The position numbers and the translations under genes are program-made. A stretch of 64,000 nt of DNA from Phyllobates terribilis (taxonomy: Eukaryota): contig NW_027362767.1 in assembly GCF_046119375.1 (NCBI RefSeq), positions 384,524,001-384,588,000 of the forward strand, written 5' to 3'. This document shows, piece after piece, positions 1-48,579 of the stretch (position 1 is its first letter; every line of letters starts with the position of its first letter). A model generated the notes under the pieces. The model searched no databases. It worked only from the letters and a program-made list of their open reading frames with translations, and was not told the DNA's origin.

Positions 1-459
1 TTTCCTTAGTGACACAGATCTGCGCTGACTGTGCACCGTGTGACATATGAGTGGCCATAAAGTAACAAAGACACCAGTCCGGCAGATGTTACAAGAAAGA
101 CAAAGAGCTGCAGACCTGCTGCATTACCAATGGGTATATATTACATTCTGTTACACTGTATGTTCCCCATCGTTGTGCTGGGTGTAGAGTTGCCCTGAGC
201 CCAGCTGAGGACATTTACCCCCTTCTCGAGGTGGCATCATCGTGACACCCCTCTGTGTGAAGCGCAGCTTCCACGTTAACGACGTATCCAAGGTCATTAC
301 TCCGGTCCATGAAGGTGTTCACCTCCTACCCCATTGTGTTCATTTGGGAAGAAGATTACTATGGAAGAAACTCTTCATATAAAAGGCATAATCCTAAATT
401 TTGGGAAAAAATATCCCAGAAATAATATCTTTTTTTGTGGTGGAAAAAAAAGTAATAGT

Positions 460-1367
460 CTATGATGATAGGTCCTGGTCGAAGTGTCTATCCTCCATAC
501 CGCACACTAGCCCAACATCCTCATCATGGGCACAGTCATGTTCCCCAATTTTTGATCTCCGGCACTCCAAAAGGGTTTTCTCCCACCCGTGACATTTTAC
601 TTCATCGAGTAGAATTCGCAGCCCCTTGCCCTCCCCGAATTCAGCTTTTCTGGCCACCTTCAATACATAGGGATAGCCCAACTGTCTGCACACAATAGAG
701 CCGGCTTTGCTATCGAATCTGTCGTTGCAGACTGTCCCCCATTCTCCATTGATGTGGATCTCCACCCTTCCTCTATCAGGTTGCTTATCGTCATTGACCA
801 GGCGGACAGTTCCATGTTTGATTTTCTTTATGACCTTTACTTTTTGCTTCTTTAGGACCTTCTTCTTCATTCGCTTTACCCCCGAGCCTTTCTTGCCTCC
901 AGTCTTGCTTCCCGCTTCGGTCCTTCTTGGAAGAGGTGATGAGGTGGTCTTGGAGTTGATTGTGTATCTTGAGTGTGACGTTCCCCGGTTGGTCGTGAAG
1001 GTTGAGTGCGATCGTCCTTTGGTGGTGGAGAAAACGTCTTTTAATTCGCTTTGCCAACCTTTGGTGGGAATCCACTGACTCCCGGGCCGAGAAGTCACAG
1101 TAACCTTTACTCCTTTCTTAGCCTTAGTGACCCATTTCTCCATCTTTGGGTCTGACGTTACTGCTTTTCTTGGCGTTGTTGGCCTAGGGACAGGGGCAGC
1201 TGTGACATAAGCCGGGGTTGTCATTTTTCTGTATGTTGTGCTGGCAGGAGACATGGTGGTAAAGTGAGGCTCCAATGTTGTGCTGAATCTGGTTGCGTTT
1301 TGCAATCTGGTCGAAATTGAAGTTGGAGCGGATTCAGTTGTCATCGTTTTGGATTTTAGAATGAGTT
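460..1367 (-). CDS. HHIPL1: HHIP-like protein, exon 9: Ser/Thr/Pro-rich stalk, Lys-rich patch, C-terminal group A SRCR domain, stop
   Basis: Acceptor TTCTCCACAG| at 1368; VRLV...GRVEIHINGEWGTVCND...VCRQLG...ILLDEVKC.G.E..LLEC...HDCAHDEDVGLVC with six Cys; total CDS 2730 nt = 909 aa. Confidence 0.94.
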
Positions 1368-1502
1368 CTGTGGAGAACGAAGAGTTGGCATATGACGTCA
1401 TATTAGATGTCACCCTAAGGTCCCATCACACATTTTTCATCATTTTATGGATATTTTTTGCCGACATTGAATAGCCATATAGTACTTCACACCAATACTC
1501 AC

Positions 1503-1585
1503 TTTGCTTTGGGTAGAAATCCACCAGTTTCCCCTTTACGGGAACAGATCGAGGACTAAGTGCACATTTGCCTGGAGGGGCTCGT
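1503..1585 (-). CDS. HHIPL1: HHIP-like protein, exon 8
   Basis: RAPPGKCALSPRSVPVKGKLVDFYPKQ (RAPPGKC family motif); TTCATAG| and A|GTGAGT; 83 nt. Confidence 0.92.
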
Positions 1586-2095
1586 CTATGAACACAAGAG
1601 AGAAGACTGTTCAGAATAAGAAATCTGAAAAATGTAGGTTACTGATGAGAAAACCAAATAACTAGTTCTCAGGACTGACAAGCTTAAGCCATATATTGGC
1701 TTAATTTTATGTAATCATTGCCATATGGTGGCCATACAAATTAGATGAATGCCGGCCCAACTTAAAAATGTTGGTGCCCCATGTGACACAGTATAATAAG
1801 GAACGGAAATACATGAGAAGAAAAACACCTCTATGTCCTTCATATAAAATTGGAGAACTATGAAGGTACAGTGTAGGACCTTAGTTGTCTACATCCATGT
1901 AAAAGCAGTGTGCATGAGGCCTTAGTCTACCAGCTCTATACACCACCATACGTATGCACATAAATAGTCAATAACAGAAGATGGACTGAATATGCAGACA
2001 CTCTACGAAGAGGTAGTATAGGTAACATTGCCGAGATCTCTTTTTTCCACCCCTCCGTCCACCATCGGCCAGTAGTGATAGAAGTAGAATATTAC

Positions 2096-2177
2096 TTTGA
2101 TGGGTCCACTATTTTGTACATGGCTCCTGCTGCCACCGATGCACTGGGCGTTCCCGTAGACAAAAAGTATAATTCAC
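2096..2177 (-). CDS. HHIPL1: HHIP-like protein, exon 7
   Basis: [26 protein letters not shown]; TTTGAAG| and AA|GTAAT; 82 nt, phases fit both neighbours. Confidence 0.9.
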
Positions 2178-2678
2178 CTTCAAAGAGAAAAGAAAAAAAA
2201 TTGAACATTGGGACTTGTTCTAACATTTGTTGTCATGTGCTCTGACTATATCATAAAAATTAAGATGAAAACAAAGAACGAGCCAAAGAGTAGCTATCAA
2301 AAGGGTCTCCCTTCTTAGTCGACACGTCTTCTCCTCAGTGCATTGGTTGGCCTATTGATTTCAGTGGTTACCATGTAATGCTTTATTTCACCTGTGGGGG
2401 TGCTACAGGAGAACTGACCCCTTCCAAAAAATGTATCCCTCTTATTTCCTAATGCTCCTTATTTTACTGTCATGCTGTACTTCTTGTGCAATGCAACACC
2501 TCTGTACAACCTCTCTCCAACACTCTGCATAAATAAGTGTCTATATACGTCATATCACTCTTTATATAGAAGCCTTTATACCTAAAGGGAACATGTCACC
2601 AGAAAATGACTTAACATTTCAATGAGATTTTTATATTAAATGTATTTCAAAAAGCCCATCTGTGTGTATATACACATA

Positions 2679-4282
2679 CAGTTGAAACCAGAAGTTTACA
2701 TACACTACATAAAAAGACACATCTGCATGTTTTTCTCAATATCTGACATGAAATCAGAATAAACCTTTCCCGTTTTAGGTCAATTAGGATTACCATAATT
2801 TTTAATATTTACCAAATGCCAGAATAATGAGAGAGAGAGAATGTTTTAAGGCATTTTTATTACTTACTGCAAAGTCAAATGTTTACATACACTAAGATTA
2901 CTATGCCTTCATACAATTCTGGGCCGCCCATATGATGATGTCATGTGTTTGGAAGCTTCTGATAGTTTTTTTGGCAACATCTCATTTAATTAGAGACACA
3001 CCTGTGGATGTATTTTAATGCACACCTGAAACACACTGCTTCTTTGTGTAGCATCAGCCAAGAAATTCGCCAAGATATCAGGTAGAGAATTGTGGACTTG
3101 CACAAGTCTGGCTCATCCTTGGGTATGATTTCAAGATACCTGAAGGTGCCTCGTTCATCTGTACAAACAATTATACACAAGTACAAACAAGATGGGAATG
3201 TCCAGCCATCATACCGCTCAGGAAGGAGACGGGTTCTGTGTCCCAGAGATGAACATGCTTTGGTCCGACATGTGCATAGCAACCCAAGGACAAAAGCAAA
3301 AGACCTTGTGAAGATGATGGCGGAAGTTGGTAAGATTGTGTCAATATCCACAGTGAAACAAGTACTGTATCAACATGGGCTGAAAGGCCACTCTGCCAGG
3401 AAGAAGCCATTACTCCGAAAGAAACATAAAAAAGCCAGATTAATGTTTGCAAATGCACACAGGAACACAGACCTTAATTTTTGGAGACATGTCCTGTGTC
3501 TGATGAAAATAAAATTGAACTTTTTGGGCATAATGACCATCGTTACGTTTGGAGGAAAAAGGGAGAAGCTTGGAAGCCTAAGAACACCATCCCAACTGTG
3601 AAACATGGGGGTGGCAGCATCATGTTGTGGGGTTGTTTTGTTGCAGGAGGGACTGGGGCACATCACAAAATAGATGGCATCATGAGAAAAGAAGATTATG
3701 TGGCAATAGTGAAGCAACATCTCAAGACATCAGCCAGGAAGTTAAAGCTTGGACGGACATGGGTCTTCCAAATGGACAATGACCCGAAGCATACTGTCAA
3801 AATGGTAACAAAGTGGCTTAAGGATAACAAAGTCAATGTTTTGGAGTGGCCATCACAAAGCCCTGATCTCAATCCTATTGAAAATTTATGGGCAAAGCTG
3901 AATAGGCAGGTGCGAGCAAGGCGACCTACAAACCTGGATCAGTTACACCAGTTTTGTCAGGAGGAATGGGCCCAAATTCCGATCAACTATTGTGAGAAGC
4001 TTGTGGAAGGATATCCCAAACGTGTGACCCAAGTCATTCAGTTTAAGGGCAATAGTACCAAATACTAATGAAATATATGTAAACTTTTGACTTTGCAGTA
4101 AGTAATAAAAATGCCTTAAACATTCTCTGTCTCTCATTATTCTGGCATTTGGCAAATATTAAAAATTATGGTAATCCTAATTAACCTAAAATGGGAAAGG
4201 TTTATTCTGATTTCATGTTGGATATTGAGAAAAATATGCATATGTGTCTTTTTATATAGTGTATGTAAACTTCTGGTTTCAA
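2679..4282 (+). mobile_element. Tc1/mariner element, Sleeping Beauty-like IR/DR family, defective
   Basis: TA|CAGTTGAAACCAGAAGTTTACATACACT left end; inverted copy at the right end with the last ~3 nt lost into (TA)n; SB-like transposase. Confidence 0.93.
3056..4068 (+). pseudogene. SB-like Tc1 transposase pseudogene
   Basis: IVDLHKSGSSLG.IS..LKVPRSSVQTI...RKKPLL / SDENKIELFGHNDHRYVWRKKGEA...QMDNDPKH...SPDLNPIEN...KGNSTKY; start codons deleted, 1-nt frameshift near 3495. Confidence 0.9.
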
Positions 4283-4315
<33 letters not shown>

Positions 4316-4326
4316 ATATACACATA

Positions 4327-5910
4327 CAGTGCCTACAAGTAGTATTCAACCCCCTGCAGATTTAGCTGGTTTGATAAGATGCAAATAAGTTAGAGCCTTC
4401 AAACTGCAAACGAGAGTAGGTTTTATGAACAGAAGCATAAATCTTACAAACCAAAAAGTTATGTTGCTCAGTTGAATTTTATTAAATTTTAAACATAAAA
4501 GTGTGGGTCAATTATTATACAACCCCTATGTTTAATATTTTGTGGAATAACCCTTGTTTGCAATTACAGCTAATAATCGTCTTTTATAACACCTGATCAG
4601 GCCGGCACAGGTCTGTGGAGTTATCTTGGCCCACTCCTCCATGCAGATCTTCTCCAAGTTATCTAGGTTCTTTGGGTGTCTCATGTGGACTTTATTCTTG
4701 AGCTCCTTCCACAAGTTTTCAATTGGGTTAAGGTCAGGAGACTGACTAGGCCACTCCAACACCTTGACTTTTTCCCTCTTGAACCAGGCCTTGGTTTTCT
4801 TGGCTGTGTGCTTTTGGTCGTTGTCTTGTTGGAAGATGAAATTACGACCCATCTTAAGATCCTTGATGGAGGAGCGGAGGTTCTTGGCCAAAATCTCCAG
4901 GTAGGCCGTGCTATCCATCTTCCCATGGATGCGGACCAGATGGCCAGGCCCCTTGGCTGAGAAACAGCCCCACAGCATGATGCTGTCACCACCATGCTTG
5001 ACTGTAGGGATGGTATTCTTGGGGTCGTATGCAGTGCCATCCAGTCTCCAAACGTCACGTGTGTGGTTGGCACCAAAGATCTCAATCTTGGTCTCATCAG
5101 ACCATAGAACCTTGAACCAGTCTGTCTCAGAGTCCTCCAAGTGATCATGAGCAAACTGTAGACGAGCCTTGACATGACGCTTTGAAAGTAAAGGTACCAT
5201 ACAGGCTCGTCTGGAACGGAGACCATTGCGGTGGAGTACTTTACTTATGGTATTGACTGAAACCAATGTCCCCACTGCCATGAGATCTTCCCGGAGCTCC
5301 TTCCTTGTTGTCCTTGGGTTAGCCTTGACTCTTCGGACAAGCCTGGCCTCGGCACGGGAGGACACTTTCAAAGGCTGTCCAGGCCGTGGAAGGCTAACAG
5401 TAGTTCCATAAGCCTTCCACTTACGGATGATGCTCCCAACAGTGGAGACAGGTAGGCCCAACTCCTTGGAAAGGGTTTTGTACCCCTTGCCAGCCTTGTG
5501 ACCCTCCACGATCTTGTCTCTGATGGCCTTGGAATGCTCCTTTGTCTTTCCCATGTTGACCATGTCTGAGTGCTGTTCACAAGTTTGGGGAGGGTCTTAA
5601 ATAGTCATAAAAGGCTGGCAAAAGAGATCTATAATCCACACATGTGAAGCTCATTATTCTTGGTGCCTGAACTACTTCTTAATACTTTAGGGGGACCAAA
5701 CAGAATTCTTGTGGTTTGAGGGGTTGAATAATAAATGACACTCTGAATTAACTTTTAACGTTTTAAAAAAACAAAAAAAAAAAAAAATTTGCTGCAGTGC
5801 ATTTCCCACTTCCAGGCTGATCTACAGTACAAATGTCACAATGCCAAGTTAATTCCGCATGTGTCAACCAGCTAAATCTGCAGGGGGTTGAATACTACTT
5901 GTAGGCACTG
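4327..5910 (-). mobile_element. Full-length Tc1 element with an intact transposase ORF
   Basis: TA flanks on both sides; identical 45-bp terminal inverted repeats CAGTGCCTACAAGTAGTATTCAACCCCCTGCAGATTTAGCTGGTT; 1584 bp. Confidence 0.95.
4532..5563 (-). CDS. Tc1-family DD34E transposase, 343 aa, uninterrupted
   Basis: Paired-like HTH N-terminus; [23 protein letters not shown]; ends KGYSTKY. Confidence 0.88.
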   Translation of the reverse strand: MVNMGKTKEHSKAIRDKIVEGHKAGKGYKTLSKELGLPVSTVGSIIRKWKAYGTTVSLPRPGQPLKVSSRAEARLVRRVKANPRTTRKELREDLMAVGTLVSVNTISKVLHRNGLRSRRACMVPLLSKRHVKARLQFAHDHLEDSETDWFKVLWSDETKIEIFGANHTRDVWRLDGTAYDPKNTIPTVKHGGDSIMLWGCFSAKGPGHLVRIHGKMDSTAYLEILAKNLRSSIKDLKMGRNFIFQQDNDQKHTAKKTKAWFKREKVKVLEWPSQSPDLNPIENLWKELKNKVHMRHPKNLDNLEKICMEEWAKITPQTCAGLIRCYKRRLLAVIANKGYSTKY

Positions 5911-40575: not shown

Positions 40576-40793
40576 CTGCAGGGCCGTGAACACATGGGCC
40601 AGTGGTCTGGATGAACGAGTCGATGTATCCAACACCTGCTTCTTAACGATTTCTTTTAATTGGGAGAAATCAGTGGGAGGAACTACAGTCTTTGCTCCCA
40701 CGTAGTGGATTGAGCTGAAGGCCTCTGGAGGGGTCCCCAGCTCATGGAATCTCTTGAGAAGGTCGGTCTCCGCCTGTCCATGGACTTTGCTTC
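40576..40793 (-). CDS. ZFYVE1: ZFYVE1-like exon
   Basis: ...RFHELGTPPEAFSSIHYVGAKTVVPPTDFSQL...TRSSRPLAHVFTALQ; TTTCACAG| and CAG|GTATG; 218 nt. Confidence 0.94.
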
Positions 40794-40816
40794 CTGTGAA
40801 AAACAATGTAGATATA

Positions 40817-42433
40817 CAGTGCATTGTGAAAGTATTTGGCACCTTGAACTTTTCTACCTTTTGCCACATTTCTGGCTTCAAACATAAAGATATAAAATTC
40901 TAATTTTTGGGGAAGAATCAACAACAAATGGGACACAATCGTGAAGTGGAATGAAATTTATTGGATATTTTAAACTTTTTTAACAAATTCAAAACTGAAA
41001 AGTGGGGCGTGCAATATTATTCGGCCCCTTTACTTTCAGTGCAGAAGTTCGGTGAGGATCTCTGAAGGATCCAATGTTGTCCTAAATGACTGGCAATGAT
41101 AAGTAGAATCCACCTGTGTGTAATCAAGTCTCCGTATAAATGCACCTGCTCTGTGATAGTCTCAGGGTTCTGTTTCAAGTGCAGAGAACATCATGAAGAC
41201 CAAGGAACACACCAGGCAGGTCCGAGATACTGTTGTGGCGAAGTTTAAAGCCGGATTTGGGTACAAAAAGATTTCCCAAGTTTTAAACATCTCAAGGAGC
41301 AGTGTGCAAGCGATCATATTGAAATGGAAGGAGTATCAGACCACTGCAAATCTACCAAGACCCGGCCGTCCCTCTAAACTTTCATCTCGAACAAGGAGAA
41401 GACTGATCAGAGATGCAGCCAAAAGGCCCATGATTACTCTGGATGAACTGCAGAGATCTACAGCTGAGGTGGGAGAGTCTGTCCATAGGACAACAATCAG
41501 TCGTACACTGCACAAATCTGGCCTTTATGGAAGAGTGGCAAGAAGAAAGCCATTTCTCAAAGATATCCATAAAAAGTCTTGTTTGAAGTTTGCCACAAGC
41601 CACCTGGGAGACACACCAAACATGTGGAATAAGGTGCTCTGGTCAGATGAAACCAAAAATCAAACTTTTTGGCCACAATGCAAAACGATATGTTTGGCGT
41701 AAAAGCAACACAGCTCATCACCCTCAAAATACCATCCCCACTGTCAAACATGGTGGTGGCAGCATCGTGGTTTGGGCCTGCTTTTCTTCAGCAGGGACAG
41801 GGAAGATGGTTAAAATTGATGGAAAGATGGACAGAGCCAAATACAGGACCATTCTGGAAGAAAACCTGTTGGAGTCTGCAAAAGACCTGAGACTGGTACG
41901 GAGATTTATCTTCCAACAAGACAATGATCCCAAACATAAAGCAAAATCTACAATGGAATGGTTCAAAAATAAACGTATCCAGGTGTTAGAATGGCCAAGT
42001 CAAAGTCCAGACCTGAATCCAATCGAGAATCTGTGGAAAGAGCTGAAAACTGCTGTTCACAAACGCCCTCCATCCAACCTCAATGAGCTCGAGCTGTTTT
42101 GCAAGGAAGAATGGGCAAGAATTTCAGCCTCTCAATGTGCAAGACTGATAGAGACATATCCCAAGCGACTTGCAGCTGTAATCGCAGCAAAAGGTGGCAC
42201 TACAAAGTATTAACTCAAGGGGGCCGAATAATATTGCACGTCCCATTTTTCAGTTTTGAGTTGGTTAAAAAAGTTTAAAATATCCAATAAATTTCGTTCC
42301 ACTTCACGATTGTGTCCCACTTGTTTTTGATTCTTCTCCAAAAAAATAGAATTTTATATCTTTATGTTTGAAGCCAGAAATGTGGCAAAAGGTAGAAAAG
42401 TTCAAGGGGGCCAAATACTTTCACAATGCACTG
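40817..42433 (+). mobile_element. Tc1 element, Passport-like family (MKTKEH...), copy A
   Basis: TA|CAGTGCATTGTGAAAGTATTT...CACTG|TA; ~214-bp TIRs; transposase 41193-42213 with a +1 frameshift near 41655. Confidence 0.94.
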
Positions 42434-42456
42434 TATATAAAAAAAAGCCTCCTCAC

Positions 42457-42961
42457 CATGACCCAGCAGGTTTGTCCGTAACGTCTCATGGAAAATAAGA
42501 AGAGCTGGTCCAAGACTGGACAAAGTGACTTCCAGACCACAGCGACTCGATAAGGCTTTCAGCTCCGGGGTGAAGAACTTCAGGTAAGCCTTGGAAGCAT
42601 TTCCAAGAAACTGGAACATATCATTGTGTAACCTCTCCGCCCGTGTCCTGTATATCACCAGATCGGACACCGCCAGGACCTTCAGAAGAAGACGTAGCCT
42701 CTGGCTCTGTTTATCGGTGGCCCCAAGAAGACCTTCCGTGTCCAGCAGAATCAGAGACAAGGCCGGGTAGTATGCAGCCCACACACCGATGGTGCACGAG
42801 TCCTGAGAAGGGGACGTTCTGAAGACCTCCAGACCCCCAAAAAACATATGGTTGAGAGTGTGGGATTTTCCATCTCCAGTGTTGCCAAAAATACTGAGAA
42901 CTTTCACAGGCTCTTGTGGACTACAGCCAAGCCTGGTAATGAGCTCTGACACATCTTTCAC
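42457..42961 (-). CDS. ZFYVE1: ZFYVE1-like, P-loop NTPase (atlastin/GBP-like) exon
   Basis: VLSIFGNTGDGKSHTLNH...TSPSQDSCTIGVWAAY...LLDTEGLLG...RLLLKVLAVSDLVIYRTRAERLHNDMFQFLG; TTTAAG| and G|GTGAG; 505 nt. Confidence 0.95.
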
Positions 42962-44224
42962 CTTAAAGCAAAAAAATAAATAAAAATCAGAACATTACCG
43001 GAGACAGCAGCAGACGTCCTGTTGATGGATCCAAGTATCGTTACAGGTAATGCTTCATATCTATCGATGACGGAGGTGCTCTTGAAGTTCCTGGGCCAAG
43101 ATGACAACAAAGCCCTCCACCACCCATGGGCTTTTTATGACCCTTTTAAAACTGGTTTTCTGTCTTGGGAAACCAGAACTTTGTGAAAGCACAATTTTTT
43201 TTTTCAAAAACAAACTGAGTTTCACTCATCCTCCCCGGGTCCAGCACCGAGTCTCCGTTGCTGCTCCGGGTGGCAGGTATTGTCAGCAGTGCTGACATCA
43301 TGTTGACAGAACTGCAGCCAATCAGTGAGCTCAGAATTTCTCCCCGAGTTAACGGCACAAGCTACTGAGCTCACTGATTGGCTGCAGTGCTGTAAACACT
43401 GCAGACAATGAAAGACACTGGAAGCAGCAGAGGAGTCTCAGTGCCGGACCCAGGGAGGGTGAGTGAAGCTCAGTTTGTTTGGTTTCTTTTCAACTTGCAG
43501 CCTCAGGTGGGGGGTTTTAGGGAAAAAAATAAAATTCAACATGCCCAATCCTCATCTTCCAAAACATAATTTGGAAGGATTGGGCGGCCCCTGCATTAGA
43601 CAGTCCTCCCGGTTATCAGTGAGCTTGGCCGGGCGTTCTGTACGGGCCCTTTACAATCTGGTTTCTGTGTTGGAGAAGTAAATCTCTTGGTATCATTATT
43701 AATCAGTGCATGTCCTCTCTGGGATACCGCTAACCCTAAATGGTTCAGGTAAAATGAGTCACGAGAATAAAAATACCCAGTACCCTAATTGTGAGCTATA
43801 ATCAGAGAAGAACATAGAGGTCCTGTCCTGTTTTCTTAATGACACACATAAAGGTTTCTCACCACTTTGCCTTTGTCTCCACGATTCTGCACTGATCTAT
43901 TTTCTCCATATAACATTACAGGGGTCTGATTTTCTCCGTAAATTAAAAAATCCTGGCTGCTTGCAGCTGCCACTAGAGGGAGCAGTTTATGGCCCACGAG
44001 GTTAGAATTCAGTTTAACCCCTTCAGAGCACAGCCCATTTTGGCCGCGCCGTTCTGGCTCTGTATACTGCACACAGCTGATCGGTGGTGGGATAAGTCAT
44101 CAATATCGAAGATCTGAACAACTCCTTTAATCTACCGGAAATGTATTTTATTTATTAATTAATTACATTTGCAATGTAATAAAAGAAAAAGCTTTGTTGT
44201 TTTGTGATTTATTTTGCAAGTTGC

Positions 44225-46967: not shown

Positions 46968-46970
<3 letters not shown>

Positions 46971-48576
46971 TGCATTGTGAAAGTATTTGGCTCCTTGAAC
47001 TTTTCTACCTTTTGCCACATTTCTGGCTTCAAACATAAAGATATAAAATTCTAATTTTTGGGGAAGAATCAACAAATGGGACACAATCGTGAAGTGGAAC
47101 GAAATTTATTGGATATTTTAAACTTTTTTAACAAATTAAAAACTGAAAAGTTGGGCATGCAATATTATTCGGCCCCTTTACTTTCAGTGCAGAAGTTCAG
47201 TGAGGATCTCTGAATGATCCAATGTCGTCCTAAATGACTGGTAATGATAAATAGGATCCACCTGTGTGTAATCAAGTCTCCGTATAAATGCACCTGCTCT
47301 GTGATAGTCCCAGGGTTCTGTTTCAAGTGCAGAGAACATCATGAAGACCAAGGAACACACCAGGCAGGTCCGAGATACTGTTGTGGCGAAGTTTAAAGAC
47401 AGATTTGGATACAAAAAGATTTCCCAAGTTTTAAACATCTCAAGGAGCACTGTGCAAGCGATCATATTGAAATGGAAGGAGTATCAGACCACTGCAGATC
47501 TACCAAGACTCAGCCGTCCCTCTAAACTTTCATCTCGAACAAGGAGAAGACTGATCAGAGATGCAGCCAAAAGGCCCATGATTACTCTGGATGAACTGCA
47601 GAGATCTACAGCTGAGGTGGGAGAGTCTGTCCATAGGACAACAATCAGTCGTACACTGCACAAATCTGGCCTTTATGGAAGAGTGGCAAGAAGAAAGCCA
47701 TTTCTCAAAGATATCCATAAAAAGTCTCGTTTGAAGTTTGCCACAAGCCACCTGGGAGACACACCAAACATGTGGAATAAGGTGCTCTGGTCAGATGAAA
47801 CCAAAATCAAACTTTTTGGCCACAATGCAAAACGATATGTTTGGCGTAAAAGCAACACAGCTCATCACCCTCAAAACACCATCCCCACTGTCAAACATGG
47901 TGGTGGCAGCATCATGGTTTGGGCCTGCTTTTCTTCAGCAGGGACAGGGAAGATGGTTAACATTGATGGAAGATGGACGGTGCCAAATACAGGACCATTC
48001 TGAAAGAAAACCTGTTGGAGTCTGCAAAAGACCTGAGACTGGGACAGAGATTTATCTTCCAACAAGACAATGATCCCAAACATAAAGCAAAATCTACAAT
48101 GGAATGGTTCAAAAATAAACGTATCCAGGTGTTAGAATGGCCAAGTCAAAGTCCAGACCTGAATCCAATCGAGAATCTGTGGAAAGAGCTGAAAACTGCT
48201 GTTCACAAACGCCCTCCATCCAACCTCACTGAGCTTGAGCTGTTTTGCAAGGAAGAATGGGCAAGAATTTCAGCCTCTCGATGTGCAAGACTGATAGAGA
48301 CATATCCCAAGCGACTTGAAGCTGTAATCGCAGCAAAAGGTGGCGTTACAAAGTATAAACTCAAGGGGGCCGAATAATATTGCACGCCCCACTTTTCCGT
48401 TTTGAATTTGTTAAAAAAGTTTAAAATATCCAATAAATTTCGTTCCACTTCACGATTGTGTCCCACTAGTTTTCGATTGTTCCCCAAAAAATTAGAATTT
48501 TATATCTGTATGTTTGAAGCCAGAAATGTGGCAAAAGGTAGAAAAGTTCAAGGGGGCCAAATACTTTCACAATGCA

Positions 48577-48579
<3 letters not shown>
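46968..48579 (+). mobile_element. Tc1 element, Passport-like family, copy B
   Basis: Same ends as copy A; transposase 47341-48356 with a -1 frameshift near 47968; (TA)n on both sides. Confidence 0.94.

What the first reader, a model, noticed from the sequence alone, without database searches (positions are those of the whole stretch)
40794..42456. A host intron that may depend on its transposon: only 44 nt remain without the Tc1
Seen: the ZFYVE1-like intron between the NTPase exon (ends 42457) and the next exon (starts 40793) is 1663 nt, of which 1617 nt is the Passport-like Tc1. Only 23 host nt flank each side (GTGAGGAGGCTTTTTTTTATATA and TATATCTACATTGTTTTTCACAG). Removing the element and one TA leaves 44 nt; a usual Tc1 excision footprint leaves about 49 nt. 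Known: vertebrate introns are rarely efficiently spliced below about 65-70 nt, and branch points usually sit 18-40 nt before the AG. Inference: the element now supplies intron length and possibly the branch point (CTTTCAC in the TIR, A at -34). It would then be locked in, because excision would damage the gene.
Basis: partly seen in the sequence, partly recalled or inferred. Interest (0 to 1): 0.75.

Follow-up and report, generated by a model that had tools for sequence, protein, structure and literature searches.

The report
Tc1 transposon filling a minimal frog intron
In the golden poison frog, a dead Tc1 transposon sits in a gene intron whose own sequence is now only 44 bases, and although the intron splices cleanly, it is unproven whether the gene now needs the transposon as a spacer.

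Summary
The window matches Phyllobates terribilis. Coding intron 2 of a ZFYVE1-like gene (minus strand, 40794-42456, 1663 nt) holds a 1617-nt Tc1 element (40817-42433). The element has TA duplications, 217-nt terminal repeats and a frameshifted transposase antisense to the gene. Host-derived sequence is 21 + TA + 21 = 44 nt.

New evidence:
- An RNA contig joins 42457 to 40793 exactly, so the intron is removed at its conserved GT-AG ends.
- The same intron is 77 and 79 nt in two other hyloid frogs and about 84 nt plus an unrelated insertion in a third. These sit at the vertebrate minimal intron size of about 76 nt. Only the Tc1-bearing lineage has fallen below it.
- The gene is under purifying selection.

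Not shown: whether the roughly 33 nt were lost before or after insertion. The copy is young, about 1.2% from its family consensus, so simple rates do not favour loss after insertion. The branch-point idea is weakened. A host adenosine at -16 aligns with the best branch motif of a relative, and the terminal-repeat candidate at -34 is predicted to be buried in the repeat stem. No empty allele was seen, and dendrobatid relatives could not be fetched.

Verdict: a real, neat, testable case, with dependence at about even odds. Earlier scan notes report possibly intact Tc1 copies elsewhere in this genome (untested).

The parts
42457..42963 (-). Coding exon 2 of the ZFYVE1-like gene (GBP-like NTPase domain). 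Its last base, 42457, is the first base of a split Gly codon.
   Evidence: ORF and Pfam GBP hit. The RNA contig of run X7 covers 42963-42456 with 0 mismatches. The translation is an exact substring of P0288.
40794..42456 (-). Coding intron 2, GT-AG, phase 1, 1663 nt.
   Evidence: Sequence. An RNA contig skips exactly these 1663 nt (table 5). Position and phase are conserved in six other frogs.
42434..42456 (-). Host 5' part of the intron: the 5' splice site GTGAGG, a T8 run, ATA, and the TA target duplication (42435-42434).
   Evidence: The DNA contig of run X21 runs from this flank 17 nt into the terminal repeat with 0 mismatches (table 8).
40817..42433 (+). Defective Tc1/mariner element, 1617 nt, with its transposase on the plus strand and therefore antisense to the host gene.
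   Evidence: TIRs. Second copy at 96.8% identity with the same ends. Pfam HTH_Tnp_Tc3_2, HTH_SB and DDE_3. Sleeping Beauty SB100X catalytic domain, E=1.2e-71.
40817..41033 (.). Terminal inverted repeat lying next to the 3' splice site. It contains the only yUnAy motif in the last 70 nt of the intron (TTCAC, A at 40827 = -34).
   Evidence: It is predicted to pair with the other arm.
42217..42433 (.). Terminal inverted repeat lying next to the 5' splice site.
41193..42213 (+). Transposase reading frame split in two pieces (41193-41702 and 41590-42213) by one frameshift near 41655.
   Evidence: About one third of the family's contigs differ by one base at 41655 (table 4).
40794..40816 (-). Host 3' part of the intron: the TA target duplication (40816-40815), TATCTAC with candidate host branch A at 40809 (-16), the pyrimidine tract, and CAG.
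   Evidence: ACATTGTTTT is shared with L001. The DNA contig of X21 runs from here 22 nt into the terminal repeat.
40576..40793 (-). Coding exon 3 (218 nt).
   Evidence: The RNA contig covers 40792-40576 with 0 mismatches. The translation is an exact substring of P0288.
46968..48579 (+). Second full-length copy of the same Tc1 family, inserted in a (TA)n tract. It is also frameshifted, but at a different place.

Best explanation
A cut-and-paste Tc1 element, now defective and antisense to the gene, inserted at the central TA of an ATATATAT tract. The tract lies in the spacer between the 5' splice site and the branch region of an intron that in hyloid frogs is a 'minimal' intron of about 77-84 nt. 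The spliceosome removes host flanks and element together as one 1663-nt GT-AG intron.

Shown:
- the anatomy of the element and the intron;
- accurate splicing;
- conservation of the intron's position and phase;
- purifying selection on the gene;
- a host remainder of only 44 nt, against about 77-84 nt in relatives.

Inferred: with the element present, the lower length limit no longer acts on the host part. Today that part leaves about 29 nt between the 5' splice site and the likely host branch A, and 16 nt from that A to the AG. The element therefore now serves as the spacer that makes the intron spliceable, and possibly as an alternative branch donor. Precise loss or excision would leave a T-rich, non-G-rich intron of 44-49 nt that a vertebrate spliceosome would handle poorly. 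That would shift the reading frame, because 44 is not a multiple of 3. This is a passive ratchet, not an evolved function.
For: - Coordinates and element ends.
- An RNA contig (2955 nt, run X7) joins 42457 to 40793 with no mismatch.
- The RefSeq protein of P. terribilis carries the same junction.
- Orthologous intron lengths are 77 nt (L001), 79 nt (Leptodactylus fuscus), and 5099 nt in Engystomops, made of about 84 nt of host plus an unrelated insertion carrying a 34-nt satellite. More distant frogs have 131, 246 and 798 nt.
- No intron shorter than 77 nt occurs among about 50 introns of this gene in five frogs.
- The vertebrate minimal intron size is about 76 bp (PMC9438311). Human introns under 66 nt are very rare and mostly G-rich (PMC4463651), whereas the 44-nt remainder is 18% G and 48% T.
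- dN/dS is about 0.04-0.08, so the gene is functional.
- No empty-site joint was found in DNA run X21. Its host-flank contigs run 22 and 17 nt into the terminal repeat, short of the 31 nt the tool requires for bridging.
Against: - The copy has only about 18-20 private substitutions in 1617 nt, about 1.2% (table 3). The lineage's synonymous divergence from other hyloids is 0.4-1.0. The element has therefore been present for only a few percent of that time, and losing about 33 nt of a 77-nt stretch in that span is improbable at ordinary indel rates.
- The target duplications and the ATATATAT context are intact, so transposase-induced flanking deletions next to the element did not occur.
- Human ultra-short introns of 37-65 nt do splice (PMC4463651, and the 56-nt HNRNPH1 intron in bioRxiv 10.1101/784868).
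- If the 217-nt repeats pair in the pre-mRNA, as the fold predicts, the effective geometry is already that of a short intron, yet splicing works.
- No dendrobatid relative, second individual or lariat read could be examined.
Confidence: 0.5

Rival explanations
1. The intron was already ultra-short (about 44 nt) and adequately spliced before the Tc1 landed in it. The element is then a neutral passenger, and its loss would simply restore a working short intron. There is no dependence.
For: About 95% or more of the lineage's independent history preceded the insertion: copy divergence is about 1.2% against dS 0.4-1.0. The window-versus-L001 intron alignment needs at least 4 separate gaps, as expected from indels accumulated over a long time. 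Validated vertebrate introns of 37-65 nt exist (PMC4463651). The likely ancestral branch A is retained in host sequence at -16.
Against: Three other hyloid lineages keep this intron at 77-84 nt despite near-complete sequence turnover, which argues for a length floor. The 44-nt sequence is T-rich and lacks the G-runs typical of validated ultra-short introns (PMC4463651). Its 5' splice site to branch distance would be 19-31 nt. Introns of 45 nt or less are extremely rare in vertebrates.
Confidence: 0.36
2. The intron had drifted below the efficient size and spliced poorly. The Tc1 insertion then improved splicing and was fixed with the help of selection. This gives dependence, but by rescue rather than by later decay.
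For: It reconciles the young age of the copy with the very short host remainder. The genome is very large and repeat-rich (12.6 Gb, 88% repeats, PMC12208295), which is compatible with weak selection that lets mildly harmful shrinkage drift.
Against: There is no direct evidence. It requires two rare events in sequence. In a genome with about 7% Tc1 (PMC12208295), fixation of a Tc1 copy needs no selective help.
Confidence: 0.1
3. The finding is an artefact: a misassembled Tc1 copy or a wrong gene model, so that the real intron or exon borders differ.
For: The family is extremely abundant, with summed k-mer depth 4-5 orders above the flanks. Short-read contigs stop inside the terminal repeat, so none bridges the junction by 31 nt.
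Against: DNA contigs of run X21 continue from each unique flank 17-22 nt into the repeat with 0 mismatches, and no empty-site joint is reported. The RNA contig skips exactly 1663 nt between GT and AG. The junction is identical in the RefSeq protein and conserved in six other frogs.
Confidence: 0.02
4. The element is taken out of the RNA by the recently described spliceosome-independent 'SOS splicing', which is triggered by paired terminal repeats, rather than by ordinary splicing.
For: The terminal repeats are predicted to pair almost completely (203 of 217 bases). SOS splicing is conserved from nematodes to human cells (PMC12779559).
Against: The observed junction lies at the conserved exon borders with GT-AG ends, not in or near the repeats. 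SOS junctions rarely use GU-AG and leave indels, and two intronic Tc1 insertions tested were not SOS-spliced (PMC12779559). SOS removal would leave a frame-shifting remnant of about 44 nt, which is not seen in the contig.
Confidence: 0.02

Closest known systems
Tc1/mariner elements of the Sleeping Beauty / Frog Prince / Passport type (long IR/DR terminal repeats) in fish and frog genomes
   Same: TA target duplication. Terminal repeats of about 217 nt starting with CAGTG. A paired-type HTH plus DDE_3 transposase very close to the SB100X catalytic domain (E=1.2e-71). Very high copy number in poison frogs, and near-identical 31-mers in fish RNA runs. This fits the reported Tc1 abundance and fish-frog transfer in Oophaga pumilio (PMC6278860).
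   Different: This copy is frameshifted and cannot make transposase. Assignment to the Passport subfamily was not tested.
Vertebrate 'minimal introns' (peak about 76-85 nt) and human ultra-short introns (37-65 nt)
   Same: The orthologous intron in other hyloids (77 and 79 nt, about 84 nt host part) sits exactly at the reported minimal size (PMC9438311). The hypothetical empty intron here (44-49 nt) would fall in the ultra-short class (PMC4463651).
   Different: The present intron is 1663 nt. The 44-nt host remainder is T-rich (48% T, 18% G) and has no G-triplets. Most validated human ultra-short introns are G-rich and use special enhancers or factors.
Transposons removed from transcripts by splicing: Tc1 in C. 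elegans mutant pre-mRNAs, and SOS splicing (PMC12779559)
   Same: A Tc1-type element with pairing terminal repeats is absent from the mature mRNA.
   Different: Here the element lies inside a pre-existing, conserved spliceosomal intron and leaves with it at GT-AG ends. No junction lies in or near the repeats.
Constructive neutral evolution (a dependency ratchet), as proposed for other cellular complexities
   Same: The logic matches: a neutral addition (the insert) makes a previously constrained feature (host spacer length) dispensable. That feature decays, and the addition becomes necessary.
   Different: The order of events is not demonstrated here. It is a single locus with no functional test.

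Membership tests
Tc1/mariner DNA transposon (Tc1-like, Sleeping Beauty type) | TA target-site duplication flanking the element | tested here: met
   TA on both sides of both copies in the window.
Tc1/mariner DNA transposon (Tc1-like, Sleeping Beauty type) | Terminal inverted repeats with conserved CAGTG termini | tested here: met
   Arms of about 217 nt, 94% complementary. The outer 32 nt are 97% complementary.
Tc1/mariner DNA transposon (Tc1-like, Sleeping Beauty type) | Transposase with a bipartite HTH DNA-binding domain and a DDE/D catalytic domain | tested here: met
   Pfam HTH_SB, HTH_Tnp_Tc3_2 and DDE_3. PDB 5cr4 SB100X, E=1.2e-71.
Tc1/mariner DNA transposon (Tc1-like, Sleeping Beauty type) | Uninterrupted transposase reading frame (an autonomous copy) | tested here: not met
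   The frame is split near 41655 into 41193-41702 and 41590-42213. It is a member of the family but a defective copy.
Passport subfamily | Closest similarity of terminal repeats and transposase to Passport of flatfish | not tested
   No reference sequence was available in the tools. Only Tc1/SB-type membership was shown.
U2-type GT-AG spliceosomal intron | GT...AG termini with a usable 5' splice site and pyrimidine tract | tested here: met
   ATG|GTGAGG ... TTGTTTTTCACAG|G.
U2-type GT-AG spliceosomal intron | Precise removal from RNA | tested here: met
   The contig of run X7 skips 1663 nt with CT..AC ends on the plus strand, which is GT..AG on the gene strand, with 0 mismatches on both sides.
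U2-type GT-AG spliceosomal intron | Conserved position and phase in orthologues | tested here: met
   Same position in L001, Engystomops, Leptodactylus, Mixophyes, Pyxicephalus and Spea.
U2-type GT-AG spliceosomal intron | Mapped branch point | not testable with these tools
   Only contigs were available. The candidates are host A-16 (40809) and terminal-repeat A-34 (40827).
Ultra-short functional intron (under 66 nt) - for the hypothetical empty allele | Existence of the short form as DNA, with spliced RNA | tested here: inconclusive
   No empty-site joint appears in the listed joints of DNA run X21, and 84 further joints were not shown. Relatives D and E gave almost no coverage. Dendrobatid loci were not retrievable.
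Ultra-short functional intron (under 66 nt) - for the hypothetical empty allele | G-rich composition or G-runs, as in most validated cases | tested here: not met
   18% G and 48% T, with no G-triplet (PMC4463651).
SOS-splicing substrate | Junctions in or near the terminal repeats that are mostly non GU-AG, with the element in an exon or UTR | tested here: not met
   The junction is at the exon borders with GT-AG ends, and the element is intronic (PMC12779559).
ZFYVE1-like (DFCP1 paralogue, about 650 aa) | GBP-like NTPase domain followed by FYVE domains, orthologous to annotated frog ZFYVE1-like proteins | tested here: met
   Pfam GBP on exon 2. All 11 coding exons map. Exons 2 and 3 are exact substrings of XP_073497557.1. 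Orthologues carry PF01363 FYVE.

The most novel reading that the evidence does not exclude
This is a natural dependency ratchet at the vertebrate minimal-intron limit. A selfish Tc1 insertion lifted the length constraint on a 77-84-nt intron. The host spacer then decayed to 44 nt, with 5' splice site to branch distance about 29 nt. The gene now cannot lose the element without losing splicing. That would make the transposon an obligatory structural part of an essential-looking gene without any sequence-specific function.
Probability: 0.42. Interest if true: 0.6.

Novelty: new member of a known kind. Interest (0 to 1): 0.4.

Why it matters
Transposons in introns are commonplace, above all in a 12.6-Gb genome with about 7% Tc1. 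What is unusual here is the host side. The intron sits at the vertebrate size floor in relatives, and in the one lineage that carries the insert the host part lies far below that floor.

If the shrinkage followed the insertion, this would be a clean natural example of how a neutral insertion becomes indispensable. It would also be a ready-made substrate for measuring the minimal spacing between 5' splice site and branch point in amphibians.

If the 44-nt intron existed first, it would be one of the shortest conventional, non-G-rich introns inferred for a vertebrate.

Either outcome can be settled by looking at a handful of available dendrobatid genomes and by one minigene series.

Tried and rejected
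1. The intron was created by the transposon. Rejected: the intron position and phase are conserved across frogs and annotated fish orthologues.
2. Read-through of the 44 nt as coding sequence. Rejected: 44 is not a multiple of 3, and the RNA lacks it.
3. SOS splicing as the removal route. Rejected.
4. Misassembly. Rejected as far as contigs allow.
5. Relatives through sequencing runs. Organisms D and E carry the same Tc1 family at huge depth. They gave only one 259-nt contig on the locus (42440-42682, 92.6% identity, with 15 unlike letters beyond 42440). That is not enough to size their intron.
6. Dendrobatid loci (Phyllobates terribilis itself, Dendrobates tinctorius, Anomaloglossus). Gene spans were returned but no DNA, because the files are too large. 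Nanorana and Xenopus tropicalis proteins were not on record, and Gastrophryne gave no DNA.
7. Metagenome scan with the exon/intron junction 27-mer: 0 hits.
8. L001 was first taken for the closest relative. Its protein is equidistant from several hyloid families, so it is only another hyloid.
9. The costly all-representatives protein search and structure prediction were not used, because the proteins were already identified.

Exons were searched by reference. Joined exon strings were built only inside local scripts, to compare with proteins already fetched. N stretches of the window (205 N) were left untouched.

Full report
**What is there.** On the minus strand, an exon ends at 42457 (...GGT CAT G) and GT follows at 42456. 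AG ends at 40794 and the next exon begins at 40793, completing a Gly codon in phase 1. The 1663 nt between them contain a 1617-nt element (40817-42433). It runs from CAGTGCATTGTG to CACAATGCACTG and is flanked by TA on each side. Its inverted repeats are about 217 nt and 94% complementary, and the outer 32 nt are 97% complementary. A second full-length copy at 46968-48579 is 96.8% identical, sits inside a (TA)n tract, and has the same termini and TA flanks. This fixes the element's ends independently of the host gene.

The plus strand of the element encodes a Tc1-type transposase. Pfam finds HTH_SB, HTH_Tnp_Tc3_2 and DDE_3. The catalytic half matches the Sleeping Beauty SB100X structure at E=1.2e-71. 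One frameshift near 41655 splits the frame into 41193-41702 and 41590-42213. The host-derived intron sequence is 21 nt + TA + 21 nt = 44 nt. Every number in the finding is correct.

**Whose gene.** The upstream exon carries a GBP-like NTPase domain. A word search with that exon found only exon-sized fragments. Cluster look-ups and a search with the full-length Engystomops protein then revealed the ZFYVE1-like paralogue of about 650 aa in many frogs. The translations of both exons flanking the intron, and the peptide across their junction, are exact substrings of Phyllobates terribilis XP_073497557.1 (P0288). That gene's annotated span of 15.2 kb equals the span of the 11 coding exons in the window. 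The window is therefore from the golden poison frog or something indistinguishable from it. Between frogs, dN/dS over these two exons is about 0.04-0.08, so the gene is under purifying selection.

**Is the intron used as predicted?** Yes. In run X7 of the same species, a 2955-nt contig lies on 42963-42456 and continues at 40792-40576 with no mismatch. It skips 1663 nt whose ends are GT..AG on the gene strand, and the cut can slide by 1-2 bases (tables 5 and 8). The contig goes on into the neighbouring exons. This also shows that X7 is RNA. In DNA run X21, contigs run from each unique flank 22 and 17 nt into the terminal repeat without mismatch, and no joint corresponding to an empty site is listed. 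These contigs stop inside the repeat, so they do not bridge by the tool's 31-nt criterion. X21 may also be the assembly's own sample.

**The comparative result.** This is the main new evidence. The same intron, at the same position and phase, has the following lengths.

| Species or locus | Intron length |
|---|---|
| Unnamed hyloid frog (L001) | 77 nt |
| Leptodactylus fuscus | 79 nt |
| Mixophyes fleayi | 131 nt |
| Spea bombifrons | 246 nt |
| Pyxicephalus adspersus | 798 nt |
| Engystomops pustulosus | 5099 nt |

In Engystomops, positions 46-4989 are a tandem array with a 34-nt period. The array lies inside what looks like a poly-A-ended insertion flanked by a direct repeat of about 20 nt. 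Removing it leaves about 84 nt of host sequence.

Three hyloid lineages thus hold this intron at 77-84 nt although their sequences hardly align. That is the behaviour expected of a 'minimal intron'. A comparative study puts the vertebrate minimal intron size at about 76 bp (PMC9438311). Among about 50 introns of this gene in five frogs, none is shorter than 77 nt. The 44-nt remainder in P. terribilis is about 33 nt below that floor, and this is the lineage with the Tc1 in it.

**How it most likely works.** The element went into the central TA of ATATATAT. From general knowledge of Sleeping Beauty-type elements this is their preferred target, but I did not test that here. The site lies between the 5' splice site and the branch region, the most tolerant place in an intron.

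The last 23 host nt align with the 3' end of the L001 intron through a shared ACATTGTTTT (10 of 10 bases). The A preceding it (window 40809, -16) corresponds to the A of UAAC in L001, which is the best branch-like motif there, at -24. The host may therefore still supply the branch point. In the empty form, that branch A would be only 29 nt from the 5' splice site.

In the minimum-energy fold of the pre-mRNA, however, 203 of 217 repeat bases pair and this A is inside the stem. The fold is only a prediction. Which A is used cannot be decided without lariat reads.

Either way, the element provides the distance between the 5' splice site and the branch. The empty intron would be T-rich (48% T, 18% G) and lacks the G-runs that characterise most validated human ultra-short introns (PMC4463651). 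Retaining it would shift the reading frame.

**Why I stop at even odds for dependence.** The copy differs from the consensus of its very abundant family at about 18-20 positions, or 1.2% (table 3). The synonymous distance of this gene to other hyloids is 0.4-1.0. The element has therefore been there for only a few percent of the lineage's separate history.

At ordinary indel rates, losing 33 nt from a 77-nt stretch in that time is a rare event. The intact TA duplications and target context argue against transposase-induced flank deletions. The alternative is that a conventional 44-nt intron existed and worked before the insertion. That is also rare, because introns that short are a tiny fraction of vertebrate introns. 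My rough estimates of the two probabilities are of similar size. They rest on assumed indel rates and on intron counts recalled from the literature, not on a computation made here.

A third possibility is that the insertion rescued an intron that had become too short. The predicted pairing of the repeats adds a complication. If it forms in vivo, the two host flanks are held together much as in the empty intron, yet splicing succeeds.

**What it is not.**
- It is not an intron made by a transposon, because the position is ancient.
- It is not an assembly artefact, as far as contigs can show.
- It is not removed by SOS splicing. That pathway cuts in or near the repeats, rarely at GU-AG, leaves indels, and did not act on the two intronic Tc1 insertions tested (PMC12779559).

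**Context.** Poison-frog genomes are swollen with such elements. Tc1 makes up about 7% of reads in P. terribilis, whose genome is 12.6 Gb and 88% repeats (PMC12208295). Oophaga pumilio carries at least 0.4 Gb of Mariner/Tc1 (PMC6278860). That study also reports likely exchange of Tc1 and mariner families with fish. This fits the fish RNA runs that share 14-16% of the sampled words of this stretch. A Tc1 landing in a minimal intron is thus expected somewhere in this genome. The interest lies only in the sub-minimal host remainder.

**Limits.** Sample S1 was not examined. The relatives gave one short contig. DNA of dendrobatid assemblies could not be fetched, and the metagenome scan was empty. 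Earlier scan notes report possibly intact Tc1 copies elsewhere in this genome. I could not check them. They matter only in that excision in trans may still be possible.

**Verdict.** This is a new example of a known kind of thing, a transposon-expanded intron. It carries a testable and moderately interesting twist.

Noticed in passing
L002:8543-13641 (Engystomops pustulosus, same intron): The orthologous minimal intron was expanded independently to 5099 nt. The added sequence is a 34-nt-period tandem array of about 4.9 kb, inside what looks like a poly-A-ended insertion flanked by a direct repeat of about 20 nt (TATATA.AGT.GTCGTAGT). Its host part is still about 84 nt.
   Followed up: partly
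window:40817-42433 and runs X15-X20: RNA runs labelled fish metagenome hold 14-16% of the sampled 31-mers of this stretch. A near-identical Tc1 family is therefore present in fish material. This fits the fish-frog horizontal transfer proposed for poison-frog Tc1/mariner families (PMC6278860).
   Followed up: no
window:40817-42433 (table 2): Summed k-mer depth over the element is 4-5 orders of magnitude above the unique flanks, both in the same species and in two related organisms (D and E). D and E show their own fixed diagnostic differences (for example 40955, 41122, 41571), which points to species-specific subfamilies of one huge family.
   Followed up: no
window:41655: About a third of the family's contigs lack one base here relative to this copy. 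The frameshift that splits this copy's transposase is therefore shared with most copies, not private to it. The second copy in the window reads through this point and is broken elsewhere.
   Followed up: partly
window:40817-42433, run X7 versus X21 (table 1): Among the kinds of change listed, A>G plus T>C make up 22 of 61 in the RNA run and 13 of 66 in the DNA run. This is a weak hint of A-to-I editing of paired terminal repeats in transcripts. It is family-wide and not specific to this copy.
   Followed up: no
window:46968-48579: A second full-length, frameshifted copy of the same Tc1 family lies about 2 kb upstream of the gene's first coding exon, inside a long (TA)n tract.
   Followed up: partly
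window:29744-44964: The ZFYVE1-like gene is only 15.2 kb in a 12.6-Gb genome, and its other introns are 137-2787 nt. The paralogue (about 650 aa, no PF22586 domain) is present throughout frogs, caecilians, salamanders and fishes, alongside the canonical protein of about 777 aa.
   Followed up: partly
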